Shown here piece by piece: positions 7,056-57,986 of a DNA stretch of 64,000 nucleotides. A model generated the notes under the pieces. It was not told the origin of the DNA and made no database searches. It saw only the letters and a list, made by a program, of their open reading frames with translations. Within the stretch, counting starts at the first letter, position 1. The number at the start of each line of letters is the position of its first letter. Where the stretch lies: the IMG/VR virus record IMGVR_UViG_3300050821_013430, positions 248,001 through 312,000 of that record; one strand, 5' to 3'. Position numbers and translations under genes: made by a program.

Positions 7056-7159
7056 TGTCTTTCTCTTTCTTACTCAGAGCGATCTATCGGACTCGAACCG
7101 ATGGTGATGTCTGCTTGGAAGGCAGATGCAGTCGCCGCTGTGCCAAGATCGCCTATATC

Positions 7160-12100: not shown

Positions 12101-12300
12101 TGGGTTTCTCCGCATTGAGGACATCGTTCTACTACGACAAAGCGTAATTGGCTATAACTGCCTGGCAGCCCACTGATCTTGTAGTCGGGGTTGTGCACTT
12201 CTGCGTCATACACCTGTCCCAAAACCAGTTGCATCTCCTTATCGAAGTATTCCGGCGAGGCATTGAACCTGTTGGAGACATCAATGCACTTGACTTTCAT
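12097..12300 (-). CDS. CPQCG-tag family, MKVKCID type
   Basis: MKVKCID...LGQVY...RFVVVERCPQCGETH*. Confidence 0.8.
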   Translation of the reverse strand: MKVKCIDVSNRFNASPEYFDKEMQLVLGQVYDAEVHNPDYKISGLPGSYSQLRFVVVERCPQCGETH

Positions 12301-12482
12301 GGATGTATCTCTCCACATTGGGAACAAGCATTACTCGGCACAATTTGGAAGCGGTGCTTGAACCACCACCCAGCACCTTTCAAATGATAACCATCACCGT
12401 ATTCAGAAATCACTTCATAAACCCTGCCTTCAAATAATGGCATACGAATACAATCACACCCTTCTACACACTTGACTTTCAT
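12297..12482 (-). CDS. CPQCG-tag family, MKVKCID type
   Basis: MKVKCVE...GRVYEV...WFKHRFQIVPSNACSQCGEIHP*. Confidence 0.8.
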   Translation of the reverse strand: MKVKCVEGCDCIRMPLFEGRVYEVISEYGDGYHLKGAGWWFKHRFQIVPSNACSQCGEIHP

Positions 12483-16765: not shown

Positions 16766-17881
16766 TTATAGGTGTTGGGCGCAGTAGCCACCATCGGCAT
16801 TGACCCACTGTTCTTGAATCAACCAATCCAATCCATCCAAGTGTTGATTGGCGGGACTACCATTGGCACTTGAATAAGTGGTGGCATATATCCAACTACA
16901 TTCATCACTTTCCTCCTCAAATCCTGTCCAAGACTCCGATGTTGGATCGGTCGTTGCCTCACTCAATTCGTGGAAGATGATGCTCGCCATACTATCAGAC
17001 GAGAAGTCTCCGTTAGGGGTTGGCAATGCGGCATCATACCCACCAGCATCTTCCAACAAGGCCCACTCATCACATAGACCGGGACATTGGATCGGATCGC
17101 CCACAAAGGCGATCTTGATGGTGTCATTACCGAAGGGATAGAAACTATGGTAGCCGCAGTATATCGAACACTCATTACCTTCCACAACATCCTTAGATGT
17201 CAGGACGAAGTATACCCCATTAGTATCGACCGGCAAACTCTTGTCAGTAAGGTGGCTGGATACGATGTCCCAGATGTTGTTGCCTTGTAAATTGGCGCCA
17301 AGTGAATAGAGATCATTGACAGACTGCACCAATTGGACTTTGCCGCTGACATAACTGGGATACCAAAACGGCGGGGGCGATTCATCAATACCAGCATCAC
17401 CATAGACAATGGTGCCGCAGTGATCAAACTGATAACCTACTGGGCCACCATCGGTTCCTATCCCGTCTAACTGATAGTAGCCGGTGTTGATATCAAGTAT
17501 GGGTGAGGCATTCAATCCGACAATCAGATCGTTGACTAACCCTGGTGCTTTGGGCGCGTATGACCAATCTCCGTACCAGATCAGATAGACATTGACAGTA
17601 TTGAGGATGACTGGCCCACCACCATAAGGAAGCCCATTGTCAGGGACGGATACCGAAACACAGCCCGAAGTGTCAGGCTGAAAACCAGCATCGCTATCAT
17701 CACCGTCCGTGAAAGATGGATAGCCATCGGAAAAGGGACGCCCTACATCAGGACTACTGGTATCGTGAGAAGCATCTACAATAACCATCCCACCATCTAA
17801 TGCGGTGGTATCGTCACCCATGCAGGCGATGAAAAGGAGAGGGCAGATCGAGAATAGGACAAAGAGCCAACGCTTGTTCAT
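16766..17881 (-). CDS. lipoprotein with Phi-1/EXORDIUM-like domain
   Basis: Lipobox-like LFIAC; GGPV...VYLIWYG.W, YFVLTS.DV, YCGYH, SIIFHELSEATTDP, DECSW. Confidence 0.72.
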   Translation of the reverse strand: MNKRWLFVLFSICPLLFIACMGDDTTALDGGMVIVDASHDTSSPDVGRPFSDGYPSFTDGDDSDAGFQPDTSGCVSVSVPDNGLPYGGGPVILNTVNVYLIWYGDWSYAPKAPGLVNDLIVGLNASPILDINTGYYQLDGIGTDGGPVGYQFDHCGTIVYGDAGIDESPPPFWYPSYVSGKVQLVQSVNDLYSLGANLQGNNIWDIVSSHLTDKSLPVDTNGVYFVLTSKDVVEGNECSIYCGYHSFYPFGNDTIKIAFVGDPIQCPGLCDEWALLEDAGGYDAALPTPNGDFSSDSMASIIFHELSEATTDPTSESWTGFEEESDECSWIYATTYSSANGSPANQHLDGLDWLIQEQWVNADGGYCAQHL

Positions 17882-17902
17882 TGAGGTACCGTTGAATGAA
17901 GG

Positions 17903-18154
17903 TTAGGAGGATTTGAGGAGCGGCAGCAACATACGCATGCGGGACGTGTCAGGATGCTTCGGATACCAGTGATTGAAATTACGCCCATCAGCAGCATCAT
18001 ACTGAATACGGTGCGCGGCGAGCGACGTCTCATTACGTACGGTGCAAGAGCGACACAACACAACGCTGAAAATCTCTGCGAAATCTCCCCAGTAATAACT
18101 GGTCAGATTGTTGGGAGAAAACTTCTGCTCACAACAGCAACATATCACTTCCAT
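17903..18154 (-). CDS. CxxC-CxxC small protein lacking the tag
   Basis: CCCC...LCRSC; body resembles the tagged family. Confidence 0.6.
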   Translation of the reverse strand: MEVICCCCEQKFSPNNLTSYYWGDFAEIFSVVLCRSCTVRNETSLAAHRIQYDAADGRNFNHWYPKHPDTSRMRMLLPLLKSS

Positions 18155-18167
18155 AGTACACCTGTTC

Positions 18168-18716
18168 TTACTTTGAGTCTTGTACGACGGGGCCCATCTC
18201 AGCCCAGTCCTTATCTGCTAATCGGTAATTCGAGTACTGCTTCTCTTCGGTGACCTCTTTGGTAATCTCTAACCAAGGCGGTAATTCGACCTTCTGTTGC
18301 TTACTCTCTAATTCCAATTCCAGGATGATCATCCCTTTTCGTTTGGGAAAGATATCCAACTCGAAATCCTGACCATTGTAGTCGAAGGTATAACGGACTT
18401 TGCTTATCGGGTCTTTCTTAGGATCGGCTCGTTCCAAGAACTTATCGTACTGTTCTTTGGTGATTTGGTTCTCGACCTCCCGATTGACACCGTTTTCAAT
18501 CAGGGTCTTCTTAGTATGCCAATAGGTCTTGTTGGTACCGAAGAAATCGTGGCTGACTTCTCGTACTCGTTCAGTGTCCTTGTCGGTAGAAGACTTCATA
18601 TAGGATTGGGAGATGTACTCGATATCTTTGGCATTAGAGACGATATGCTCGATGGCCTCTATCGAAAGAGGGTGCTCGACGCGCCATCTTCTTTCTATTT
18701 CCAATTCGTCAGTCAT
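18168..18716 (-). CDS. CYTH-domain protein (triphosphatase/adenylate cyclase-like)
   Basis: ELEIERRW, ISQSY, RVR, KVR..F..ELDIF, ELELE, YSNYRLA. Confidence 0.88.
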   Translation of the reverse strand: MTDELEIERRWRVEHPLSIEAIEHIVSNAKDIEYISQSYMKSSTDKDTERVREVSHDFFGTNKTYWHTKKTLIENGVNREVENQITKEQYDKFLERADPKKDPISKVRYTFDYNGQDFELDIFPKRKGMIILELELESKQQKVELPPWLEITKEVTEEKQYSNYRLADKDWAEMGPVVQDSK

Positions 18717-19285
18717 TTCCAATTATTGCCATAGATGATGTCTTTGATACAACTTACGGAAACACCATATTTCCGTGCTAAGGTGGTACAAGCACCATAT
18801 TTTGGCCGCTTGATATGATTTGGCATCCAATACGCATCATACTCTTTCCGAATATTTGCTACTTGAACATCAGTAAGAATGGCGCGGCCGTTTTTGCTTC
18901 CACTTTGAGAAATGGACATTTTTTCCAACGTTTCGTTAGTATGTTTCGTGCCCCTTCTCGAAAAACCAAACTCTAATAAATTATAGCCGTTGTCAATGCT
19001 GTCAAATTTTTTGATGAAGAAGTTTTCCCAGTAATCGGCTATTTCTTGCGTATGGCATATCATCAAACAATGGATGAAAAAATTGTCTTTGCCATACTTA
19101 GCGATGGCTCTGGCTATCTTGACACAATGGTTATGCGGGCCTATCCGACAATGAGACATAAATCGAAACTGTAAATTCTTCCAAGTCTGCCCCACATATA
19201 CCTTGTCATTGACCGTATTTCGGATCACATAAATAAAACAATGGGTCGTTTGATTTTCGGCTAAACTTCTTGGGCAATACACCAT
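18713..19285 (-). CDS. GIY-YIG homing endonuclease with NUMOD3/HTH
   Basis: FIYVIRNTVNDKVYVGQT...RF..H...GYN; KHTNETLEKMS; AT-rich. Confidence 0.88.
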   Translation of the reverse strand: MVYCPRSLAENQTTHCFIYVIRNTVNDKVYVGQTWKNLQFRFMSHCRIGPHNHCVKIARAIAKYGKDNFFIHCLMICHTQEIADYWENFFIKKFDSIDNGYNLLEFGFSRRGTKHTNETLEKMSISQSGSKNGRAILTDVQVANIRKEYDAYWMPNHIKRPKYGACTTLARKYGVSVSCIKDIIYGNNWK

Positions 19286-19334
19286 ACAAGTCTGCTAATT
19301 TATTGGCAGATTGCAAGTCATTTCGGAAGTAAGA

Positions 19335-19604
19335 TCAGTGTTTTTCTCCGCACTGAGGGCAATTTTCTTCGGCTATCAGTTTTTTGAGGGCCTCATAGAA
19401 CTCATCGCCATCTTCGAGAACGAAAGAGTAGAGAGACTGCGTTTTGAGATCGTTCCATAGGCTGCCCCCAACGACTTCACGGACTCGATAAGCACACGGC
19501 CCACATACCACGCCAATGAACGATTTTGGATCGAAGACAAGTCTATAATGGTAAGACCATCCCTCGGTCAGTAGTTTGCGACAAAGAGGACACTTATAGT
19601 CCAT
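19335..19604 (-). CDS. CPQCG-tag family, CxxC-CxxC type
   Basis: MDYKCPLC...CGPC...CPQCGEKH*. Confidence 0.8.
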   Translation of the reverse strand: MDYKCPLCRKLLTEGWSYHYRLVFDPKSFIGVVCGPCAYRVREVVGGSLWNDLKTQSLYSFVLEDGDEFYEALKKLIAEENCPQCGEKH

Positions 19605-19848
19605 GTCGTTCTCCGCACTGAGGACAATATCCGAGTTTGATCCTGGCCTTGTATAAGGCACTAACGAAACTTGGGCTTCCCCCATCCACACAGAAAGTCC
19701 ATCCTGCTTCCGTACCCGCATACCACTCAGCATGGAACGGCTCTCCCTTTTCCCGATACACCAATTCAGCGCAGGACAGGCATGTAATCCCAATATTAGC
19801 ACCTATTTCCCTGGGTATTGAACATTGACACAAGAAACACTTAGACAT
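19594..19848 (-). CDS. CPQCG-tag family, CxxC-CxxC type
   Basis: CFLC...CLSC...CPQCGERHGL*. Confidence 0.8.
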   Translation of the reverse strand: MSKCFLCQCSIPREIGANIGITCLSCAELVYREKGEPFHAEWYAGTEAGWTFCVDGGSPSFVSALYKARIKLGYCPQCGERHGL

Positions 19849-20029
19849 GCACTTCTCCGCATTGAGGGCAAGGCTCTTCCACTACCTCAAAGCGAGTTTT
19901 GGCCCAGCACAATCGCTTATTCTCGACCAATTCATAGTGGTTTTTGTGCTCTACTGCGACCGTATAAACTACGGTCATACCGAGAGTGCCGTGGCCAAAC
20001 CCACGATCATTGATGCATCTTACCTTCAT
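19841..20029 (-). CDS. CPQCG-tag family, MKVKCID type
   Basis: MKVRCIN...RFEVVEEPCPQCGEVHV*. Confidence 0.8.
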   Translation of the reverse strand: MKVRCINDRGFGHGTLGMTVVYTVAVEHKNHYELVENKRLCWAKTRFEVVEEPCPQCGEVHV

Positions 20030-20286
20030 AGGTGTTTCTTTCCGCACTGAGGACAATTGCCGTTCTTTCTGCTTTGCAGAATATCCAACACCGCCTTATC
20101 CAAAGGCGAGTCGCCGTTATAGCCAGTTGCTCCGTATTGTCGATACATTCCCGGTAGTCCTAATTTACTTACTGCTTGAACAGCAGGATGTTGATAGGCA
20201 ATTTCAGCACAAGGAATGCAAAGAAACTTAGAACAGCCACTAAGCGCCGTATGTACTTCGATTCTGCATATCTCGCAGTTATTCAT
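20026..20286 (-). CDS. CPQCG-tag family, CxxC-CxxC type
   Basis: CEIC...CIPC...CPQCGKKHL*. Confidence 0.8.
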   Translation of the reverse strand: MNNCEICRIEVHTALSGCSKFLCIPCAEIAYQHPAVQAVSKLGLPGMYRQYGATGYNGDSPLDKAVLDILQSRKNGNCPQCGKKHL

Positions 20287-20473
20287 GTCGCTCTCCACAT
20301 TGGGGACAACCATTCTCTGGCACCTCTACAAAACGCCACTTGAAAAAGACCCAATGCGGATTTCCTAACTCATAGCAATCAGATCGGCTATAATTGGAGC
20401 GAGTTCGATATACCTGGCCCAAAACAAGCCATCCACTGATATCGCCGCTTACATCAATGCACTTGACTCTCAT
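20279..20473 (-). CDS. CPQCG-tag family, MKVKCID type
   Basis: MRVKCID...LGQVY...RFVEVPENGCPQCGERHE*. Confidence 0.8.
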   Translation of the reverse strand: MRVKCIDVSGDISGWLVLGQVYRTRSNYSRSDCYELGNPHWVFFKWRFVEVPENGCPQCGERHE

Positions 20474-20730
20474 TGATGCTTTTCTCCACACTGCGGGCAG
20501 TACAATTCCGCTCGGGCTTTGAGAATGGCTTTTTGGGTAGCCAGATGCCTACCATCTTTCTTTTCCTTCCCATAGCAGATAAATCCCGAACAAGAGCAGG
20601 TGTATTGGGCACCATAGTCTTGCTCTAACATCTTAGCGCAAGGATCGCATAGGTATCCAATACCAGCCCAACCATGCTTGTCAATTAGGCAACTACAAAG
20701 ATCACAGCGTTTTTCCAGATTAGGCATCAT
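20470..20730 (-). CDS. CPQCG-tag family, CxxC-CxxC type
   Basis: CDLC...CDPC...CPQCGEKHQ*. Confidence 0.8.
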   Translation of the reverse strand: MMPNLEKRCDLCSCLIDKHGWAGIGYLCDPCAKMLEQDYGAQYTCSCSGFICYGKEKKDGRHLATQKAILKARAELYCPQCGEKHQ

Positions 20731-20742
20731 TCATCTCCTACA

Positions 20743-20778
20743 CAAAGACAAAAGGCCCAGACCTTTCGATCTGGGCCT
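20743..20778 (-). terminator. Rho-independent terminator
   Basis: AGGCCCAGA/TCTGGGCCT stem followed by TTTTGTCTTTG on minus strand. Confidence 0.75.
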
Positions 20779-20803
20779 CCTTGGCTTACAACCTCATTTT
20801 TGC

Positions 20804-21115
20804 TTACTGGCTATCCGAAGTATCCGTCTCAGTAGATGAGGTCGAATTTACCTTGCGGGTGCCCTTGACTGGCTTCTCGCCGCGAATGTATCCGCCAAAC
20901 TTGCCGCGGGATACATAACCCTCGGGCTCGTTGTTATGAGCAAACCAATCAACGAAAGGTAGCACTGACTTAGGCTCTGCCCCTACCGTGCGACCTACAT
21001 TGATGGACATCTCCATCAGGGAGATGCGATCTCCGAGGCTCATGCTGTCGTTCTCTGTCTCGAATGCGTCGAGGATGTTCCCAACGCGCTCTGTTAGTGT
21101 TTTGCGTGTCTTCAT
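20804..21115 (-). CDS. small putative DNA-binding protein
   Basis: GGAG SD; YVSRGKFGG motif shared with 35987..36343 (YIERGMKGG). Confidence 0.65.
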   Translation of the reverse strand: MKTRKTLTERVGNILDAFETENDSMSLGDRISLMEMSINVGRTVGAEPKSVLPFVDWFAHNNEPEGYVSRGKFGGYIRGEKPVKGTRKVNSTSSTETDTSDSQ

Positions 21116-21170
21116 AATGTCAATTCTCCATAATTGGGCGGTCATCACGACCGTCCGTGTAAGTACCAGG

Positions 21171-21199
21171 AATATAGGGCCCCTGGTGAGCCTTGTCAA
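21171..21199 (-). promoter_or_regulatory. sigma70-type promoter
   Basis: TTGACA-17nt-TATATT on minus strand. Confidence 0.7.
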
Positions 21200-21232
21200 T
21201 GGCCTACTCTCAAACAGGTAGGATAAGATGCG

Positions 21233-21517
21233 CTAATTGAGGAGAGTGGCGCTAAACTCACGATTGATGGCGTCCAAAACTTCGGAATATCCCGCCTTCT
21301 CATCTGGGTCGGTCGTCGTCATCAATTGGTTTCTAATCATCCCCGTATAGAGTTCAACGACTTTTTGGTCGCCCACGGCATCAGCCGCAATTGTCAGTAA
21401 TTTGGATAGGGTTTGGGTGGCCTCTTTGGTTTCCGACCAATCTCTTTCAGGAGAGAGGGTTTCGGCTTTTTTGACGAGGCCGAAGAGGACTTTGACAAGG
21501 CGGTCGAGATCAGTCAT
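21233..21517 (-). CDS. hypothetical protein
   Basis: ORF. Confidence 0.65.
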   Translation of the reverse strand: MTDLDRLVKVLFGLVKKAETLSPERDWSETKEATQTLSKLLTIAADAVGDQKVVELYTGMIRNQLMTTTDPDEKAGYSEVLDAINREFSATLLN

Positions 21518-22112
21518 TCGTTGGGTCTATATCGCCGCTTTCGGAGATCAATTCGCCATATTTGGTGAGGAGGTAATCTGCCATTGCCACTACTTTGTCG
21601 CGACGGTAATACTTGGATTTTGGGGGTTTAGGGACGGGAAGTTTTTCGCGGAGGCCTAATTGGACTTGGCGAGCATAACGGCCCGCGCATTCTCTACCAC
21701 AAAAGGCGGAGACCTTTCCTTTGCTGGACTTGTCTCTAATCAAGCGAGGGCTACGCTCAAACTTCTTCTTGCACATCGGACATTTGAGTTTGACCATTTT
21801 GACCCTGCGAGTATCAGATGCTGAATGTTCGGAGCGAGGAAGTAATTGGAGGTTTTCCATTCGATTATCATTCCTATCACGATTGATATGATCGACTGTC
21901 ATCTCGGCAGGAATATCACCGTGATGCTGCTGATAGAGCCAACGAGCCTCTGACATTGTTTTTCGAGTGCCATCAGGCCAGAGAAGGATGACAAAACTAC
22001 GATCGGCTTTGTTGCGATACGGCCCGAACACTTTTGGCTTCTTTTTTGCCGTAGCAATAAGTTCGTAGAGTTCCGCAAATTCGGAAAGATCGCTATACTT
22101 TTCCACACCCAT
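21510..22112 (-). CDS. HNH endonuclease with zinc-finger extension
   Basis: TVDHINRDRNDNRMENLQLL...EHS; CPMC...FCGREC. Confidence 0.85.
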   Translation of the reverse strand: MGVEKYSDLSEFAELYELIATAKKKPKVFGPYRNKADRSFVILLWPDGTRKTMSEARWLYQQHHGDIPAEMTVDHINRDRNDNRMENLQLLPRSEHSASDTRRVKMVKLKCPMCKKKFERSPRLIRDKSSKGKVSAFCGRECAGRYARQVQLGLREKLPVPKPPKSKYYRRDKVVAMADYLLTKYGELISESGDIDPTND

Positions 22113-22167
22113 ATGCCACTATAATGGCATACCACTATGTATGGGCCCTTATAAAGAAGGCAAATGA

Positions 22168-23346
22168 ATGAAACTCAATGAATACGCTAAGACCTTAGGT
22201 ATCAGTTATAGTGCAGCACGAGATCGTTATTACGGAGGGAAGATAGATGGCGCCTATCAAGATATCAAGGGTAGAAGCCTGCTTATCAATACTGGCGATT
22301 ATGACAATGATCTAATCCAGTGCGGCAAATATCGATACAACTTGGGAACACTTACCAGAGAAGACGCCAACTCATTCTACATCCTCGGCGCATTCATCAC
22401 CGATGGTAATATCATCTCCAACAATGGATGTAGTTGGCAATGCGAAATCAAGTCAATAGACTATGATTGGTTAGAGTTGATGGCATCAAAATTGGGGCCG
22501 GACTTGAAACTACATCCGACACATAATAGGTGTAAGAGGATACGGTTATTCAGCCGAGAAATCGGAGATTGGTTCATCGCTCATAACTGCACGCCTAACA
22601 AGTCGATGACAGTAAAGATGCCTAATGTCCCGTCGCAATATCTACCAGACTTCATTAGAGGAGTAATTGATGGTGATGGAACACTAACCATACCACCCAA
22701 TAGAAGTGATAGGGCTTCGTGCCATGTATCCATAACGACTGCGAGTATCGATTTCGCAATGTCAATGCGGCAGGCGATTTCTAATACCTATGGAGTGTAT
22801 GTTGGCCTAACTCTTCCCAAAATGCGAGACTGTATGATAGATGGACATCCAGTGATAGCGCGAAACCAATTATACACAATAGGGGTAAGTGGGGAGGGGT
22901 GCCGAAAACTACTTGAAAAGGTGTATTTCCCTGGTCATGAAATGGCGCTCAAAAGAAAAGCCGCTCTTGCCTTGAAAATCATCGCCAGACAAGAACAAAT
23001 CGCTTTGCAAGCGGCAGAGCGAAAAACTTACTACCTCAGGTCAGACGGAAGCAAATTCTTTTGGCCACCGATAGAAAATTTGGTCTCAATGATCAATGAG
23101 AGTGGTGTTGAAAATCTCGGCAAGGAATTGAACATCGGCCCACAAGCCATTAGAAGGCAAATCAAGAAGTTTGGGATGGAAGACAAAATCAAGAAGTGGA
23201 AAACACCCAAAAGAGTATTACTACCATTCTCAAAAGAGGAGATTATCGACTTGCTCAAAACGCACAACTATGTTCAGATCGCTAAAATGGCTAACACATC
23301 AACAACTACGCTTCGGCAAAAGATGAAAGAGATGGGATTACCTTAG
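22168..23346 (+). CDS. free-standing LAGLIDADG homing endonuclease with N- and C-terminal HTH
   Basis: FYILGAFITDG and DFIRGVIDGDG; N-terminal MKLNEYAKTLGISY. Confidence 0.85.
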   Translation: MKLNEYAKTLGISYSAARDRYYGGKIDGAYQDIKGRSLLINTGDYDNDLIQCGKYRYNLGTLTREDANSFYILGAFITDGNIISNNGCSWQCEIKSIDYDWLELMASKLGPDLKLHPTHNRCKRIRLFSREIGDWFIAHNCTPNKSMTVKMPNVPSQYLPDFIRGVIDGDGTLTIPPNRSDRASCHVSITTASIDFAMSMRQAISNTYGVYVGLTLPKMRDCMIDGHPVIARNQLYTIGVSGEGCRKLLEKVYFPGHEMALKRKAALALKIIARQEQIALQAAERKTYYLRSDGSKFFWPPIENLVSMINESGVENLGKELNIGPQAIRRQIKKFGMEDKIKKWKTPKRVLLPFSKEEIIDLLKTHNYVQIAKMANTSTTTLRQKMKEMGLP

Positions 23347-23504
23347 TCATATTGCTGCAAATTGTTCATCTCTTGCAGGATTTCGTCCTTGACGCTGGCA
23401 GGAAGACGCATAAGCATATAGGTGTTGAACAAGAGGAAAATGGCCAACAATAGCCAGCCTAAGACATTCCAAACCCGATCCTTGCTATCGTCTCGTCCCA
23501 TCAT
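23343..23504 (-). CDS. small membrane protein (53 aa)
   Basis: Manual translation with one TM segment; ATGA coupling. Confidence 0.5.
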   Translation of the reverse strand: MMGRDDSKDRVWNVLGWLLLAIFLLFNTYMLMRLPASVKDEILQEMNNLQQYD

Positions 23505-27260: not shown

Positions 27261-27342
27261 TGGTGCTCTCCCCAGGATTCACACCTGGATTATTCCGGGC
27301 TTTTGAGGGCCCGGTGCCGTTAGTAATTACGGCCAGAAGAGC
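27261..27342 (-). tRNA. tRNA-like gene, atypical (8-nt anticodon loop CCTCAAAA, T-loop TGTGAAT)
   Basis: 7-bp acceptor GCTCTTC/GGAGAGC plus ACCA; D stem GCCG/CGGC; T stem CCAGG/CCTGG. Confidence 0.7.
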
Positions 27343-39563: not shown

Positions 39564-39805
39564 TGATGATACCGTTTGCATTGATGGCATCGTTGAGGAA
39601 CGGAGATGCCAAGTTGTTCGATATACTCTGTCCAAACCCTGATGGTAAAGGCATTGCCTCCGGATTGCTGGTAGATCCCCGCTGAAACGGGGTAATTGGC
39701 CTCTGCCGCGAGTTTCGCAGAACAGGATGGACAGGCTGCCATTTGATCGGCGTGCATTGCGAATGACAGTTTGACCTCGGCAGTTTGGCAGATGAAGCAC
39801 TTCAT
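39560..39805 (-). CDS. CPQCG-tag family, CxxC-CxxC type
   Basis: CFIC...CPSC...CHQCKRYHQ*. Confidence 0.75.
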   Translation of the reverse strand: MKCFICQTAEVKLSFAMHADQMAACPSCSAKLAAEANYPVSAGIYQQSGGNAFTIRVWTEYIEQLGISVPQRCHQCKRYHQ

Positions 39806-40650
39806 TGGCTACTCACCTGGCAACATCTCCCGTCTGTGAAGTTATGATACCCAGCCCCATGGTTTTTGGTGATGGGGCGACAGCGATGTCTGCCACCAAA
39901 CATTGTTCCCCCTTTCAATCCTGAGCGAAGCATCAAACCAGGAACGGAAGAATGCGCATACTGCGGAACTTCAATCCAATCATCAGTATCTCCCACCATC
40001 TGATGAACATGGTATTGCAGACTGGTGCATCCAGGAAACTCCGTAATGTTGGCGCGGTAATCACATGCCTTGTTTCCGCACATAATCGGTTGGCGCTCAG
40101 TATTACAGGTGGTATTGCTAAACTCAAAACCGCTGCCGTAAGGATAAGGTGCCATATCCTCCCCCTCGCAGGCCATATTCCATTGATCCTCGTCGCATAA
40201 CTTCGCGCCACGATCCGTACACATCTTTTGCGCCTCACCCCAGGTTAGATCATACGGCATCCCCATCTCATCATGCAGTTCTTCCCGATCGATGCAGTAA
40301 TCCATATGCACACGCTGCTTGGATAGACATACAGATGGCTGTTGGTATCGTTTGCATCGAGCCCAAGGCTTATCAGCCTCTTCCTTAGACATCCATTCGA
40401 GACACTTCTGTTCGACTTTGGGGCAGTAATCGCCCACCACATGCACCATTCCATTAGGGCAATAAGTAGGCTCGGGAACAACGGTAAAAGTACCCTCTAT
40501 CTTCACTGAGTTAGCAGGAGGTGGAGGATTAGGGCAACCGTTAGGATAGCAGACATTGTGTAGATTATTGGGAGGTGGTGTGGTTTGCTGCACCGTATGC
40601 TGACAAGCCATTACACTCAGACAGATGATTGATGGAATCATGATGCGCAT
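39802..40650 (-). CDS. lipoprotein with FGE-sulfatase (SUMF1/EgtB/PvdO-like) domain
   Basis: VMAC lipobox; YCIDREE, TWGEAQKMC...KLCDEDQWNMACEG...YPYG, HQMVGD..DW, GRCC; AAGGAG SD. Confidence 0.78.
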   Translation of the reverse strand: MRIMIPSIICLSVMACQHTVQQTTPPPNNLHNVCYPNGCPNPPPPANSVKIEGTFTVVPEPTYCPNGMVHVVGDYCPKVEQKCLEWMSKEEADKPWARCKRYQQPSVCLSKQRVHMDYCIDREELHDEMGMPYDLTWGEAQKMCTDRGAKLCDEDQWNMACEGEDMAPYPYGSGFEFSNTTCNTERQPIMCGNKACDYRANITEFPGCTSLQYHVHQMVGDTDDWIEVPQYAHSSVPGLMLRSGLKGGTMFGGRHRCRPITKNHGAGYHNFTDGRCCQVSSQ

Positions 40651-40664
40651 GATGATACTCCTTG

Positions 40665-41033
40665 CTACTGAGAATGAACGAGACCACATTGAGAACAGGC
40701 GTTTTCTTCAACCACTACAAAACGATCTTGAAACCAAGGGTTGCCGGATACTTCTGCCAACACGTACCCGCATTGCGGACACGCTCCATAGTAGTCGATA
40801 GTGTTTCGCACCGCCCTCTCATGAGCATAATGACCTTTCAGCATCTCGATCCTTTTCCCGTTCTTGACGAACTCTTTCCAGGAGTCGCCAGGGAATAGGT
40901 CTTGTCTCAACGCAGTGGTGCGGTCATAGATGCCCTTGGCGCAGGAGCAACAAAACTCGTACCAGCCAGGACTAAACTCTTTGTCTTCGCAAGAAGAGTA
41001 CTGGCCGCACATGTCGCACTTGAACTTGATCAT
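40665..41033 (-). CDS. CPQCG-tag family, fused double-tag unit
   Basis: CDMC...CCSC...CPQCG-YVLAEVSGNPWFQDRFVVVEENA-CSQCGLVH. Confidence 0.78.
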   Translation of the reverse strand: MIKFKCDMCGQYSSCEDKEFSPGWYEFCCSCAKGIYDRTTALRQDLFPGDSWKEFVKNGKRIEMLKGHYAHERAVRNTIDYYGACPQCGYVLAEVSGNPWFQDRFVVVEENACSQCGLVHSQ

Positions 41034-41040
41034 CGATATC

Positions 41041-41340
41041 TCACGAAGGGTAAGGAGTGGGCGTAATGTCGTGTACAAACCCACACTGACCGCAGGTAGT
41101 CCAGTGAGACTTGACTTGCTCGACCGCAGCGGCAAAGTGCGGATTGCTTCTGCTGTAAAAGAAGCCCCTTTTGTCCGCTTCTGTATGCGCTATCCGTTTA
41201 TGCCAGCCATACTCTGATCGGTCTGCATAGAAGCCCGGCGCATGGAGGAAGACCTCCCTCGCACAAACGGGACACAAGTGCCAGTAGGCATCATATTGCT
41301 TGCCAATCACCCCGACGCCACATAGATCGCACTTGTTCAT
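41041..41340 (-). CDS. CPQCG-tag family, CxxC-CxxC type
   Basis: CDLC...CPVC...CGQCGFVH. Confidence 0.78.
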   Translation of the reverse strand: MNKCDLCGVGVIGKQYDAYWHLCPVCAREVFLHAPGFYADRSEYGWHKRIAHTEADKRGFFYSRSNPHFAAAVEQVKSHWTTCGQCGFVHDITPTPYPS

Positions 41341-41636
41341 TGGCTCACCTCTAACTGAATGGGCGGAACCCAATGACACATTCCACACTGCAAACAAGTA
41401 CCATACTCGGCTTTGATGGCCTTGATAGTCTGATCGAATGAAGGATAGTCGACATAGTTGAATCCACCACCACGCCCATCGAATATCTCGTTCCATTTGA
41501 GCCATGCTTGTTCAGAATGATCGGGGAAGAAAGCGTCCCGAAGGAATATCTGCTTGGCGCAATGGACACACACCTTACGATATTCTGAGCGAAGGTCGAA
41601 GTCTAACTTGACGCCGCATATGTAGCACACACTCAT
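41337..41636 (-). CDS. CPQCG-tag family, CxxC-CxxC type
   Basis: CYIC...CVHC...CLQCGMCH. Confidence 0.78.
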   Translation of the reverse strand: MSVCYICGVKLDFDLRSEYRKVCVHCAKQIFLRDAFFPDHSEQAWLKWNEIFDGRGGGFNYVDYPSFDQTIKAIKAEYGTCLQCGMCHWVPPIQLEVSQ

Positions 41637-41637
41637 C

Positions 41638-42246
41638 TTAGTACCTCGCCTCTGGGTTCTCGAAAGGATCGGTCAAAGAGTTGGTCTCCTGGTAGTAGGC
41701 GTCCAACAGTTTTCGATACACCCGCATATTGGGCTTGAATCGACCGGAGAAAAACTCCTCGTCGTTTCCGAACAAGGCCTTGCTCAACGCTCCGGCTACA
41801 CCACTCGATCTGCTAATTCCGCCATCACAATGGATGACGATGCGTTGAATGTAGTGCAGGTGCTTTCTGACGAATGACCAGATTTCGCCAGCCTGCAAAG
41901 CAGTGAAGAGTTGGCTCTCAGTAGTTTGACCGACAGCCACATCGGCATCCGCAAAGGTCAGCCCCAAAGTTCCCAAGCAAAGAGGGTTGGTCGGTATCTT
42001 CGGTACATCATCCGCTCTGCTGGTGATTGAGATGATGATATGCGGTACCTCTTGCGGAGCCACTCTTTCGATGGCAGCCCGACTATACACCAGTATCTCC
42101 ACCTTCTTGTTCTCTTGCTGCTCATAGAGACGAGGAGCAAAGAGGATCTTATGCCACTGATGCTTCTGATAACTCCGATATTGGAGGTAGAGGAAGAAAC
42201 CAGCAGAGCCAACAGAGAGGATCGAGAAGAAGTCTATCCAATTCAT
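41638..42246 (-). CDS. Cys-based (CX5R) protein phosphatase-like protein
   Basis: IISIT, L.FAD, IVIHCDGGISRSSGVA, PN..VY; N-terminal TM segment. Confidence 0.8.
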   Translation of the reverse strand: MNWIDFFSILSVGSAGFFLYLQYRSYQKHQWHKILFAPRLYEQQENKKVEILVYSRAAIERVAPQEVPHIIISITSRADDVPKIPTNPLCLGTLGLTFADADVAVGQTTESQLFTALQAGEIWSFVRKHLHYIQRIVIHCDGGISRSSGVAGALSKALFGNDEEFFSGRFKPNMRVYRKLLDAYYQETNSLTDPFENPEARY

Positions 42247-42715: not shown

Positions 42716-42966
42716 GATGCCACCTCTTCCTTCTTGGGAGAGTGTTGTATGACCAGTTTGGCGCGCTGCTTCTTAGCACCAAGACCAACGCCGAGTCTGC
42801 TATCCAACAGAGCGATCTTCTGCTCGGTAGAAAGCCCGGCAAAGAACGCCTGACGCTCGATGGCTTCCTCACGCTTGTGTTTCTTGTTGTCCGGACGACG
42901 ACCATTGCAACCAGGATTACGACGCTGACGAATATGCTTACCGCGTTTCGATACGAGAGGTTCCAT
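42712..42966 (-). CDS. basic hypothetical protein
   Basis: Coupled ORF. Confidence 0.6.
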   Translation of the reverse strand: MEPLVSKRGKHIRQRRNPGCNGRRPDNKKHKREEAIERQAFFAGLSTEQKIALLDSRLGVGLGAKKQRAKLVIQHSPKKEEVAS

Positions 42967-43517
42967 TATTGTCTTCCTTGTTTGAGTGAATATGCAAACA
43001 GAGCCGCAGCACTTGCAGCCCCAACATTGATTGATCGAACAGAGCCGCGCATTGATATCTCTACCAGATGATCCAGCAACGCCAATATCTCAGGCTGCAA
43101 ACCGTCCTTCTCTTCGCCAAAGCATAACAGCGGTTTCTCGGGCCATTGGAAGTCTTGCAGTGGCGTAGTTCCGTTGATATTGTTCTCCAATCCGACGAAG
43201 GCATATCGCTCTTTCAGAGCGGACACGGCTTCGATAGAAGGAAGATGGATGACATCAGTATATCGGTAGGTGCCTTGTGCGGCTCTGCGATCCCAGTGTC
43301 TTCGACCATAGTAATAGACCGCTTCGGCTCCAAAGGCATTAGCGTTCCTGACCAAGCAACCGAAGTTGAAGTCGTGTTCGATCTGAGCCATCAATACTGC
43401 GCAAGGCAGCGCTTTGGCTTTCAGATCAGCCTTGATCTCTTCGGTGCTTAGTGCCCTATAGCAGTCTCGGACATTGCGTTGCCAGAGGAAGCGCTCATCG
43501 TACTTCTGCTCTTCCAT
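42966..43517 (-). CDS. TrmH/SpoU-family RNA 2'-O-methyltransferase
   Basis: HDFNFGCLVRNANAFG, LCFGEEKDGL, VEISMRGSVRSINVGAASA. Confidence 0.9.
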   Translation of the reverse strand: MEEQKYDERFLWQRNVRDCYRALSTEEIKADLKAKALPCAVLMAQIEHDFNFGCLVRNANAFGAEAVYYYGRRHWDRRAAQGTYRYTDVIHLPSIEAVSALKERYAFVGLENNINGTTPLQDFQWPEKPLLCFGEEKDGLQPEILALLDHLVEISMRGSVRSINVGAASAAALFAYSLKQGRQ

Positions 43518-43767
43518 AATTGACTCCGCAGATCAATCCAATCAGTTTAGTGATCAGGAAAAAGACGAGTCGATTCCACCAAGTGAAAGGGATGTACTCT
43601 CCACACTTGACACCTCTTACTTCGTCCTCGAAGGGAGAAAGGACGGGATAGACCCAATGAAAACGACTGGGGAAGTAGCCACGATTGTCTTCCTCACGCC
43701 AAGAGCCATCCCACTCACAATAGGAGACCTCGCCACAGGTACGACAGAACTCGCGGATGCGTTTCAT
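43495..43767 (-). CDS. hypothetical protein
   Basis: ATGA coupled; CRTC. Confidence 0.55.
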   Translation of the reverse strand: MKRIREFCRTCGEVSYCEWDGSWREEDNRGYFPSRFHWVYPVLSPFEDEVRGVKCGEYIPFTWWNRLVFFLITKLIGLICGVNYGRAEVR

Positions 43768-44396
43768 AGATCGATGACGATGGGAGGATTGATTGGCTGA
43801 TAATGTCGATTGCAGGATGAGGCATTGACGAACTTGACGCCATTTCTTTCGGCAGTGCCATAGCCTTCGTGTATGTGCCCACAAGCAAAAAGGCGCAACT
43901 GCTTCAACTGGTCAATACGACCCAACAAGTCTTTATCTCCAACCTTCTCTCCGGCTTTGGTAGTATCCAACATCCCGTAGGCAGGCCCGTGTGTCAAAAG
44001 AACTTGTGTGTCGTCTGGTATTTTGGCCCAAACCGCAGCGATATCCGCACCTCGACGAACATTGAATGCCCAATCAAAATACCACGCAGAGCAAGGCGAG
44101 CCGTAGATTTTGAGCCCATCGATCTCGATTGCTTCGTTCTCCAAGTAGATCGTGCCTGACTCTCTAATCAGATTGACGCAAACATCACGATCTCTATTCT
44201 CGAAACAGAAGTCGTGGTTTCCCGCAATGAACACTTTGTGCTTGTGCGGTAGTCCTCGAAGCCAGTTGGCAAACTTGGCGATCCGATCTACGGCACCGTG
44301 ATAAGTCGCGTCGCCAGTATGGATGAAAATGTCCCCGTCCGGAACGACTACTTTCTCTTCCTGTTCGTGTGTATCTGATGCTAAAACTAAGCGCAT
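43764..44396 (-). CDS. calcineurin-like metallophosphoesterase
   Basis: SDTHE, HTGDAT, AGNHD, THGP, CGHIHE. Confidence 0.92.
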   Translation of the reverse strand: MRLVLASDTHEQEEKVVVPDGDIFIHTGDATYHGAVDRIAKFANWLRGLPHKHKVFIAGNHDFCFENRDRDVCVNLIRESGTIYLENEAIEIDGLKIYGSPCSAWYFDWAFNVRRGADIAAVWAKIPDDTQVLLTHGPAYGMLDTTKAGEKVGDKDLLGRIDQLKQLRLFACGHIHEGYGTAERNGVKFVNASSCNRHYQPINPPIVIDL

Positions 44397-57949: not shown

Positions 57950-57986
57950 GATGTAGCCCTCCACATTGGGGACAGCGGATGATCAA
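57942..57986 (-). other. 'empty' tag-only mini-ORF (14 codons, TTG start)
   Basis: TTG ATC ATC CGC TGT CCC CAA TGT GGA GGG CTA CAT CAT GGC TAA = (M)IIRCPQCGGLHHG*. Confidence 0.6.

What the first reader, a model, noticed from the sequence alone, without database searches (positions are those of the whole stretch)
40665..41033. Fused double-tag unit: type B body joined at CPQCG to the tail of a type A gene
Seen: after a complete CxxC-CxxC...CPQCG (40767-40781) the frame continues YVLAEVSGNPWFQDRFVVVEENACSQCGLVH. That segment matches the C-terminal half of MKVKCID members (12297: YHLKGAGWWFKHRFQIVPSNACSQCGEIH). The first tag lacks its xxH-stop, and the N-terminal half of the type A gene is missing. 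Inference: an in-frame deletion whose breakpoint falls right after CPQCG, direct evidence that units recombine at or near the tag and that mixed-type arrays shuffle.
Basis: partly seen in the sequence, partly recalled or inferred. Interest (0 to 1): 0.66.

Follow-up and report, generated by a model that had tools for sequence, protein, structure and literature searches.

The report
Recombinant double-tag gene in huge phage
In a 473-kb phage with about 100 small genes that all end in the same zinc-knuckle tag (CPQCGxxH), one gene is a recent natural chimera of two unit types joined at the tags, and a nearly identical strain still carries the unfused version.

Summary
Window 40665-41033 (- strand) encodes a 122-aa protein. 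It has a complete type B body, an internal CPQCG that lacks its His-stop, about 20 residues that match only the C-terminal half of the SH3-like type A units, and a normal terminal tag (CSQCGLVH). It is not an assembly artefact, because four separately assembled datasets carry it. A fifth contig (L001) is 99.4-99.9% identical on both flanks and holds the unfused B gene, ending CPQCGYVHGIN-stop. So the fusion is recent.

The event was not a simple deletion between neighbouring B and A genes. L001 has two type C genes where the window has 68 nt of A-like sequence. Three more distant relatives also have type C genes next to the downstream FGE-like gene. No parent type A gene was found anywhere. 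The likeliest history is that about 503 nt were replaced by a short patch from an unknown type A donor. The left joint is out of register, 8 nt after the CPQC codons. The right joint is in register, inside the last tag.

Tags are conserved as protein, but unrelated units share exact runs of up to 17-24 nt in them. About half of the tags also carry the next gene's ribosome-binding site. Reads could not be examined.

The parts
40665..41033 (-). Fused ORF, 122 aa (P0002): type B body, internal tag, type A-like tail, terminal tag
   Evidence: identical protein in JGI, Logan and ENA assemblies
40782..41033 (-). Type B body, residues 1-84. It has an N-terminal CxxC...CxxC zinc ribbon followed by helices, and is 100% identical to the unfused allele P0001.
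   Evidence: invariant C6, C9, C28, C31; AF2 is confident only for residues 1-40
40761..40781 (-). First tag, CPQCG-YV, now internal and lacking His-stop. The left joint lies at its 3' end: the last shared base is 40762 and the first differing base is 40761.
   Evidence: L001 continues H-G-I-N-stop
40694..40761 (-). Window-specific segment of 68 nt, which replaces L001 860-1362 (503 nt). Residues L92-N111 (40701-40760) resemble strands 3-5 of the SH3-like type A units.
   Evidence: no donor copy in the genome or in IMG/VR
40665..40700 (-). Terminal tag A-CSQCGLVH-SQ-stop. From 40693 onward it is identical to the tail of the type C gene C2 in L001. An outgroup C2 (P0006) has the same ACSQCGLVH. 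The right joint is in register, within or just 5' of this tag.
39802..40650 (-). Downstream FGE-sulfatase-like gene (282 aa), identical in the fused and unfused haplotypes. It serves as the anchor for synteny.
41041..41343 (-). Upstream type B paralog (tail CGQCGFVH...), same local subfamily as the B part
41337..41636 (-). Second upstream type B paralog (tail CLQCGMCH...)
12297..12482 (-). Type A reference unit (61 aa), the closest paralog of the tail. It was modelled as a five-stranded SH3-like barrel.

Best explanation
The 122-aa ORF is a recent recombinant allele in a tandem array of translationally coupled small genes that share a C-terminal CPQCGxxH zinc-knuckle tag.

The ancestral locus was B - C1 - C2 - FGE, as in contig L001. 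In the lineage of the window, about 503 nt were replaced by a patch of about 57-68 nt copied from a type A (SH3-like) unit of an unknown donor, probably a co-infecting relative. The replaced stretch ran from 8 nt past the CPQC codons of B, through both type C genes, up to the tag of C2.

The left joint is illegitimate and out of register: tag to mid-body, probably at a G-Y-V / GGnTAYGT microhomology that coincides with the conserved Y-x-L of type A. The right joint is tag-to-tag and in register, so the chimera still ends in a canonical tag.

Shown here:
- the two haplotypes and the positions of the joints;
- the polarity of the event;
- the type A likeness of the patch.

Inferred:
- the donor;
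- the mechanism, which could be a double template switch or short-patch recombination at microhomology;
- whether the protein functions.

The tag itself is most likely a Cys2-His zinc knuckle that pairs with an N-terminal Cys of the body. In about half the units its Gly-Glu codons double as the ribosome-binding site of the next gene.
For: The fused allele is real:
- It occurs in four separately assembled datasets: JGI 3300050821, JGI 3300021407, ENA ERZ27253762 and Logan SRR7093038.

The unfused allele exists:
- It is P0001 on L001.
- L001 1-859 matches window 41620-40762 with 1 mismatch. L001 1363-2743 matches window 40693-39313 with 5 mismatches. Only the middle differs: 503 nt in L001 against 68 nt in the window.

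Polarity (the window state is derived):
- The FGE protein is identical in L001 and the window.
- P0006, a C2 variant that differs from L001's C2 at 7 of 80 residues, also sits directly before FGE and ends ACSQCGLVHQQ.
- L005 and L006, whose FGE is 64% and 51% identical, also have type C genes directly upstream of FGE and no type A gene there.
- All family members end in xxH close to the stop.

The patch is type A-like. It corresponds to the last three strands of a confidently modelled five-stranded SH3-like barrel (pLDDT 90).

The mechanism is feasible:
- Unrelated units share exact runs of up to 17-24 nt in their tags.
- Strain comparison shows short patches of high divergence. One covers a single B-unit body, and its 5' edge lies in the upstream gene's tag.

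Relics of other events:
- A solo tag lies at window 57950-57976.
- An 18-aa mini-unit lies at genome 340469-340522.
Against: - No donor type A gene with this tail was found in the genome, in IMG/VR, or by the word search. The left microhomology therefore cannot be seen directly.
- The unfused state rests on one 2.7-kb contig.
- The DNA of the outgroup contig (P0006) and of the ENA assembly could not be read.
- Divergence patches also occur outside tagged genes, for example in an HNH gene. Joints at tags could therefore reflect survival of in-frame, tag-preserving products and not a hotspot.
- Reads could not be examined.
- The type A likeness without the tag is only moderately significant (E=0.006).
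Confidence: 0.6

Rival explanations
1. One reading: a single in-frame deletion between an adjacent complete type B gene and a complete type A gene. The deletion would remove B's His-stop and the N-terminal half of A.
For: - The left joint looks like a deletion joint. The Y-V of B's tag coincides with the conserved Y-x-L of type A.
- Mixed A/B arrays are common in this genome.
- Other deletion relics exist.
Against: - The only alternative haplotype has two type C genes there, not a type A gene.
- C2 with the same ACSQCGLVH tag adjacent to FGE occurs in an outgroup strain.
- L005 and L006 have type C genes and no type A gene at this locus.
- No full type A parent is on record.
- The model would need an unobserved ancestor B-C1-C2-A-FGE plus independent tag-to-tag deletions in other lineages.
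Confidence: 0.15
2. The fused form is ancestral, and L001 arose by insertion of a C1-C2 cassette that also restored a His-stop to gene B.
For: The fused form is the majority, found in four of five datasets.
Against: - An insertion would have to recreate a canonical tail (YVHGIN-stop) of the same subtype as B's tandem neighbours.
- Type C genes next to FGE are shared by three more distant relatives.
- No other double-tag protein occurs among 65 tagged relatives in 1.84 billion representatives.
Confidence: 0.05
3. An assembly chimera joined two tags of different units.
For: Short repeated tags could mislead a short-read assembler.
Against: - The same 122-aa product, or its tail, occurs in four assemblies from different samples and pipelines.
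- These include a 45-kb contig that is 99.99% identical over 9.25 kb.
Confidence: 0.03
4. A purpose-built, conserved two-module protein. For example, CPQC and CSQC spaced 24 residues apart around a beta-hairpin could form a new zinc ribbon. In that case the gene is not an accident of recombination.
For: - The frame is intact.
- The allele is the commonest one.
- Two CxxC knuckles about 24 residues apart is classical zinc-ribbon spacing (established knowledge).
Against: - It occurs only in near-identical strains.
- The unfused allele is 100% identical over residues 1-91, so there has been no time for adaptation.
- ESM Atlas's own model of the protein is poor (pLDDT 0.53).
Confidence: 0.12

Closest known systems
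PeSL-mediated modular shuffling in the hyperplastic regions of T4-type phages (Arbiol et al. 2010, PMC2839356; Comeau et al. 2014, PMC4122927)
   Same: - Closely related phages differ by insertion, deletion or replacement of small non-essential genes.
- The edges of those differences lie in a short motif repeated many times through the region.
- The motif also has a gene-expression role.
   Different: - There, the motif is an intergenic promoter plus stem-loop terminator, conserved as DNA.
- Here, it is the last eight codons of the genes themselves. It is conserved as protein with free synonymous sites, and its expression role is an embedded ribosome-binding site and stop/start overlap.
- No mini-circles were examined.
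C(P)XCG zinc-finger micro-proteins of haloarchaea (e.g. PMC11241148, PMC2253796)
   Same: These are very small proteins built around C(P)XCG knuckles. The family is large within one genome.
   Different: - That family is cellular and archaeal.
- Its motifs are not fixed at the extreme C-terminus.
- It has no invariant Gln or trailing His.
- It does not occur in tandem, translationally coupled arrays.
- No sequence relationship was shown (Pfam scan blank).
Fusion genes made by unequal crossing-over between tandem paralogs (haemoglobin Lepore type; from my own knowledge)
   Same: A chimeric gene forms from two members of a tandem family, with loss of the intervening DNA.
   Different: - Lepore-type events are single crossovers in homologous register.
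- Here the left joint is out of register (tag to mid-body).
- The A-like piece is not from a neighbouring gene in any known haplotype.
SH3-like small beta-barrels (fold of the type A body)
   Same: The AF2 model of the 12297 unit has five strands. The top 50 listed Foldseek PDB rows are all SH3 domains, with TM 0.54-0.69.
   Different: - Foldseek E-values are weak (0.06-0.2).
- Sequence identity is 7-23%.
- SH3 domains have no C-terminal zinc knuckle.

Membership tests
CPQCGxxH-tagged small-gene family of this phage clade (undescribed) | C-x-Q-C-x-x-x-H within about 12 residues of the stop codon | tested here: met
   The fused ORF ends CSQCGLVHSQ-stop. Of the 98 motif matches, 79 have 0-2 residues after the His.
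CPQCGxxH-tagged small-gene family of this phage clade (undescribed) | Exactly one tag per protein, at the C-terminus | tested here: not met
   The fused ORF has a second, internal CPQCG without His. None of 65 tagged relatives has two tags.
Type B units | Invariant C6, C9, C28, C31 plus the tag C85, Q87, C88, H92 | tested here: inconclusive
   The B part has all of these residues except H92, which is L in the fused allele. H92 is present in the L001 allele.
Type A units (SH3-like) | N-terminal M-K-V-K-C strand, G-x-V-Y strand, and Y-x-L ... W ... R-F-x-V-V before the tag | tested here: not met
   Only the Y-x-L ... RFVVV part is present. The first two strands, including the invariant C5, are absent.
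PeSL-type modular shuffling | Differences between near-identical genomes are bounded by a repeated motif | tested here: met
   Both edges of the 68-nt / 503-nt replacement lie in tags. This is a single event.
PeSL-type modular shuffling | The motif is an intergenic promoter plus terminator stem-loop conserved as DNA | tested here: not met
   The motif is coding. Its synonymous positions vary as in the rest of the genome: TGT/TGC about 50:50 and CAA/CAG 57:43.
C(P)XCG zinc-finger micro-proteins | [quoted passage not shown] | tested here: inconclusive
   The motif count is met (CDMCG, CPQCG, CSQCG). At 122 aa the protein is longer than the <70 aa class. No homology was shown.
C(P)XCG zinc-finger micro-proteins | Zinc binding | not testable with these tools
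   This needs metal analysis of purified protein.

The most novel reading that the evidence does not exclude
The CPQCGxxH tag may be a three-way module: a zinc knuckle that closes many unrelated mini-folds, the translation-initiation region of the next gene, and a source of 8-24-nt homology. Together these would let a huge phage shuffle, delete and fuse about 100 small genes in frame, a phage analogue of exon shuffling. On this reading the double-tag gene is a caught-in-the-act product.
Probability: 0.25. Interest if true: 0.8.

Novelty: new variant of a known kind. Interest (0 to 1): 0.55.

Why it matters
Huge phages carry large blocks of tiny genes of unknown function, and how those blocks diversify is poorly documented. 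This locus shows, at population resolution, one natural allele pair in which a new chimeric small protein arose. Its joints lie in a shared C-terminal motif.

It also shows that the motif is dual-coding, serving as both protein tag and ribosome-binding site. That gives a concrete, testable model for how such arrays turn over.

The tagged family itself appears undescribed:
- Pfam gives no hit.
- No isolated phage in GenBank matches.
- Only 65 tagged type B representatives occur among 1.84 billion proteins.

Tried and rejected
- **Search for the type A parent or donor.** All of these were blank:
  - a word search with the tail alone;
  - blastn and codon-anchored comparison within the genome, where the best exact run is 15 nt (best hit 20 nt at 90%) and paralog tails are 34-46% identical;
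  - two degenerate-pattern scans of IMG/VR;
- **Rearranged C1/C2 DNA as the source of the 57-nt piece.** Rejected. Local alignment on both strands gives only 10-12-nt matches.
- **IMG/VR scan with P0001.** No relatives.
- **GenBank phages.** Only a chance-level hit, E=0.4.
- **Pfam.** Nothing for the fused protein.
- **AF2 of the unfused B protein.** Confident only for the N-terminal zinc ribbon (mean pLDDT 63), so the placement of the tag in type B could not be read.
- **Fused protein.** It was not folded. MAFFT aligned all paralog tags to the second tag, which would have misled the model.
- **ESM Atlas look-alikes.** Uninformative.
- **P0079 as ortholog of B.** I first took P0079 (tail CPQCGYVHGIPQIQ) for the ortholog of B. 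By position and tail it is the ortholog of the 41337 gene, so it is used only as evidence for the local tail subtype.
- **Unavailable DNA.** The P0006 contig, the ENA 472,404-nt assembly and the Logan contig could not be read.

Full report
**Context.** The window is bases 248001-312000 of a single-contig, 472,749-bp virus record.
- Between genome positions 182 kb and 392 kb, about 100 small ORFs, all on the - strand, end in C-x-Q-C-x-x-x-H. Of the 98 motif matches, 79 have only 0-2 residues after the His.
- The bodies differ widely. Type A starts MKVKC and is all-beta. Type B has an N-terminal CxxC...CxxC. Type C has CDHCG...WCxxC...KVKAIPK. Several other body types occur.
- A profile of 24 type B units, searched against 1.84 billion representative proteins, gave 90 hits at E<=1e-3. 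Of these, 65 are small and C-terminally tagged, and 15 of those 65 are from this genome.
- Pfam gives nothing. GenBank phages give nothing real. A full-text search for the motif gave no relevant paper.

**The observation.** The ORF at 40665-41033 (-) encodes 122 aa.
- Residues 1-84 are a type B body.
- Residues 85-89 are CPQCG, followed by YVL instead of xxH-stop.
- Residues 92-111 (LAEVSGNPWFQDRFVVVEEN) lead into A-CSQCGLVH-SQ-stop.
- A type A HMM built with the tag removed hits residues 88-112 at E=0.006 among 8,488 genome ORFs. Next-best unrelated hits have E>=1.
- A phmmer search with the tail ranks five type A genes first.
- BLASTP against the 12297 gene gives 13/21 identities.
- The AlphaFold2 model of the 12297 unit (7-row alignment) has pLDDT 90 and five strands. 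The top 50 listed Foldseek PDB rows are all SH3 domains, with TM 0.54-0.69 but weak E-values of 0.06-0.2.
- The fused tail corresponds to the last three strands plus the tag. The first two strands, including the invariant C5, are missing.
- This is the only family-type CPQCG in the genome that lies inside a frame without its His-stop. The other internal one, at genome 182955, keeps its His. None of 65 tagged relatives has two tags.

**The allele is real and recent.**
- The exact 122-aa protein is on record from JGI, Logan and ENA. The locus with the fused gene occurs in four separately assembled datasets.
- One of them, a 45-kb contig from another JGI sample, is 99.99% identical over 9.25 kb.
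- The same 90% cluster holds P0001, a 95-aa protein identical through residue 91 that then ends H-G-I-N-stop.
- Its contig L001 (2,743 nt, a fifth sample) matches the window with 1 mismatch in 859 nt on the left and 5 mismatches in about 1,380 nt on the right. The middle differs: L001 860-1362 (503 nt) against window 40761-40694 (68 nt).
- The L001 middle encodes the end of B, an 85-aa type C gene (C1), and most of an 80-aa type C gene (C2) that ends KACPQCGLVHSQ-stop.
- The left joint follows the shared ...TGTCCGCAATGCGGGTACGT.
- The right joint lies in GCCTG(TT/CC)CTCAATGTGG..., which is the Cys and Ser/Pro codons of the last tag.

**Polarity.**
- The FGE-like protein downstream is identical in L001 and the window.
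- A C2 variant, P0006, differs from L001's C2 at 7 of 80 residues. It comes from a 2.5-kb contig of the same sample as the window genome, also sits directly before the FGE gene, and ends KACSQCGLVHQQ.
- The terminal tag of the fused gene (ACSQCGLVH) is therefore most simply C2's own tag.
- Relatives whose FGE is 64% (L005) and 51% (L006) identical also have runs of type C genes directly upstream of FGE, and no type A gene there.
- B - C1 - C2 - FGE is therefore ancestral and the window state is derived.
- A deletion alone cannot produce the A-like 57-68 nt. That stretch has no counterpart in L001 on either strand, no close copy elsewhere in the genome, and no match in IMG/VR or in the word index.

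**Most likely mechanism (inferred).**
- A short patch from a type A unit of an unknown donor replaced the 503 nt, through two joints.
- The right joint is tag-to-tag and in register.
- The left joint is out of register. B's tag residues G-Y-V fall exactly on the conserved (G/D)-Y-x-L of type A, with the same spacing to R-F as in the 19841 unit. This suggests a GGnTAYGT-like microhomology.
- A double template switch, or short-patch recombination with a co-infecting relative, fits these facts.
- Feasibility: tags of unrelated units (body identity about 20%) share exact runs of up to 17-24 nt.
- Short-patch exchange does occur in this population. L008, from L001's sample, is collinear with window 17.3-23.5 kb at 97.3% identity, with mismatches clustered in patches.
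- One patch (19654-19868; 36 mismatches in 215 nt) covers the body of one B unit, and its 5' edge lies in the upstream gene's tag. Other patches lie in untagged genes such as an HNH gene.

**What the tag is.**
- Synonymous sites in the tag vary as in the genome at large: TGT/TGC about 50:50 and CAA/CAG 57:43. Selection therefore acts on the protein.
- In type A the invariant residues are C5, C53, C56 and H60, plus Y32, F45, Q55 and G57. That is a Cys3-His set, which would tie the N-terminal strand to the C-terminus. This is inference, and no metal was tested.
- Type B has invariant C6, C9, C28, C31, C85, C88 and H92.
- The Gly codon is GGA in 41 of the 77 tags that have a Gly codon there (53%), against 29% genome-wide.
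- In 62 of 96 cases the next ORF's ATG overlaps or abuts the stop. In 46 of 103 tags an SD-like motif lies inside the tag, 5-10 nt before that ATG.
- The tag is thus dual-coding. This explains why relics keep it: a solo tag at window 57950-57976 supplies GGAGG for the next gene, and an 18-aa mini-unit at genome 340469-340522 is a start joined to a tag.

**Limits.**
- The unfused state rests on one short contig. Its C2-FGE joint and type C content are independently supported, as set out under Polarity.
- The donor is unknown.
- One event cannot separate a mechanistic hotspot from survival of in-frame, tag-preserving products.
- Whether the chimera functions is unknown. The ENA assembly calls only a 59-aa product there, which may or may not reflect a mutation.

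**Verdict.** The closest known analogue is PeSL-mediated modular shuffling in T4-type phages (PMC2839356), with a coding, dual-use motif in place of an intergenic regulatory cassette.

Noticed in passing
whole genome 182-392 kb (window 1-64000 lies inside): About 100 small genes with unrelated bodies all end in CPQCGxxH. There are at least six body types, including SH3-like, zinc-ribbon, MRFNVW-type and METQDFW-type. All are on one strand and most are translationally coupled. The family has no Pfam entry and no relevant paper was found.
   Followed up: partly
window 57950-57976 (-): A solitary tag (CPQCGGLHHG-stop) starts 8 nt after the stop of the preceding unit and is out of frame with it. 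Its GGAGG sits 7 nt before the next unit's ATG. It looks like a relic of a deleted unit, kept for the ribosome-binding site.
   Followed up: partly
genome 340469-340522 (-), outside the window (the enclosing 47-aa ORF call is 340466-340609): An 18-aa mini-unit, MTSCGCCDRSCPQCGEIH. It is a unit start joined almost directly to its tag, so the body has been deleted.
   Followed up: no
genome 415892-416380 (-) and 182806-183375 (-), outside the window: The first is a full type A domain whose tag is broken after ACP and is followed by about 70 more residues. The second is a 189-aa ORF with an internal CPQCGQAH followed by 41-45 residues. Both are possible further fusions or stop losses.
   Followed up: no
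L004 3199-4978 and 6590-6874: A relative phage (FGE 57% identical) has, at the syntenic place, a different small-gene family. It starts MIIKFSSGLEL and shares a different C-terminus (...RMSKLxAFL-stop). Shared C-termini may be a general habit of this phage group.
   Followed up: no
P0089 (3,226 aa, from the representative search): A giant protein with at least 16 tandem type C-like modules (CDHC...WCxxC...IPKK) and no CPQCG tags. The type C body therefore also exists as an internal repeat.
   Followed up: no
window 17294-23474 versus L008: Divergence between strains is mosaic. Long identical stretches are interrupted by patches with 10-20% mismatches: 17731-17760, 19654-19868, 21535-21933 (inside an HNH endonuclease gene) and 23376-23474. 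HNH_3 and GIY-YIG domain genes lie in this stretch. A LAGLIDADG_2 domain gene was seen in the relative locus L004.
   Followed up: partly
window 39802-40650 (-): An FGE-sulfatase-like gene with a hydrophobic N-terminus. Its nearest cellular homologues (33-39% identity) include MAGs labelled Polyangiaceae and Myxococcota. This is a weak lead to the host.
   Followed up: no
window 7077-7152 and 27261-27342 (-): tRNA-Gly(tcc) and tRNA-Leu(caa) genes lie among the arrays.
   Followed up: no
window 41638-42246, 42966-43517 and 43764-44396 (-): A DUSP-like phosphatase (weak Pfam hit), a SpoU-type RNA methyltransferase and a metallophosphoesterase sit just upstream of the B units. They are syntenic in relatives L003 and L006.
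   Followed up: no
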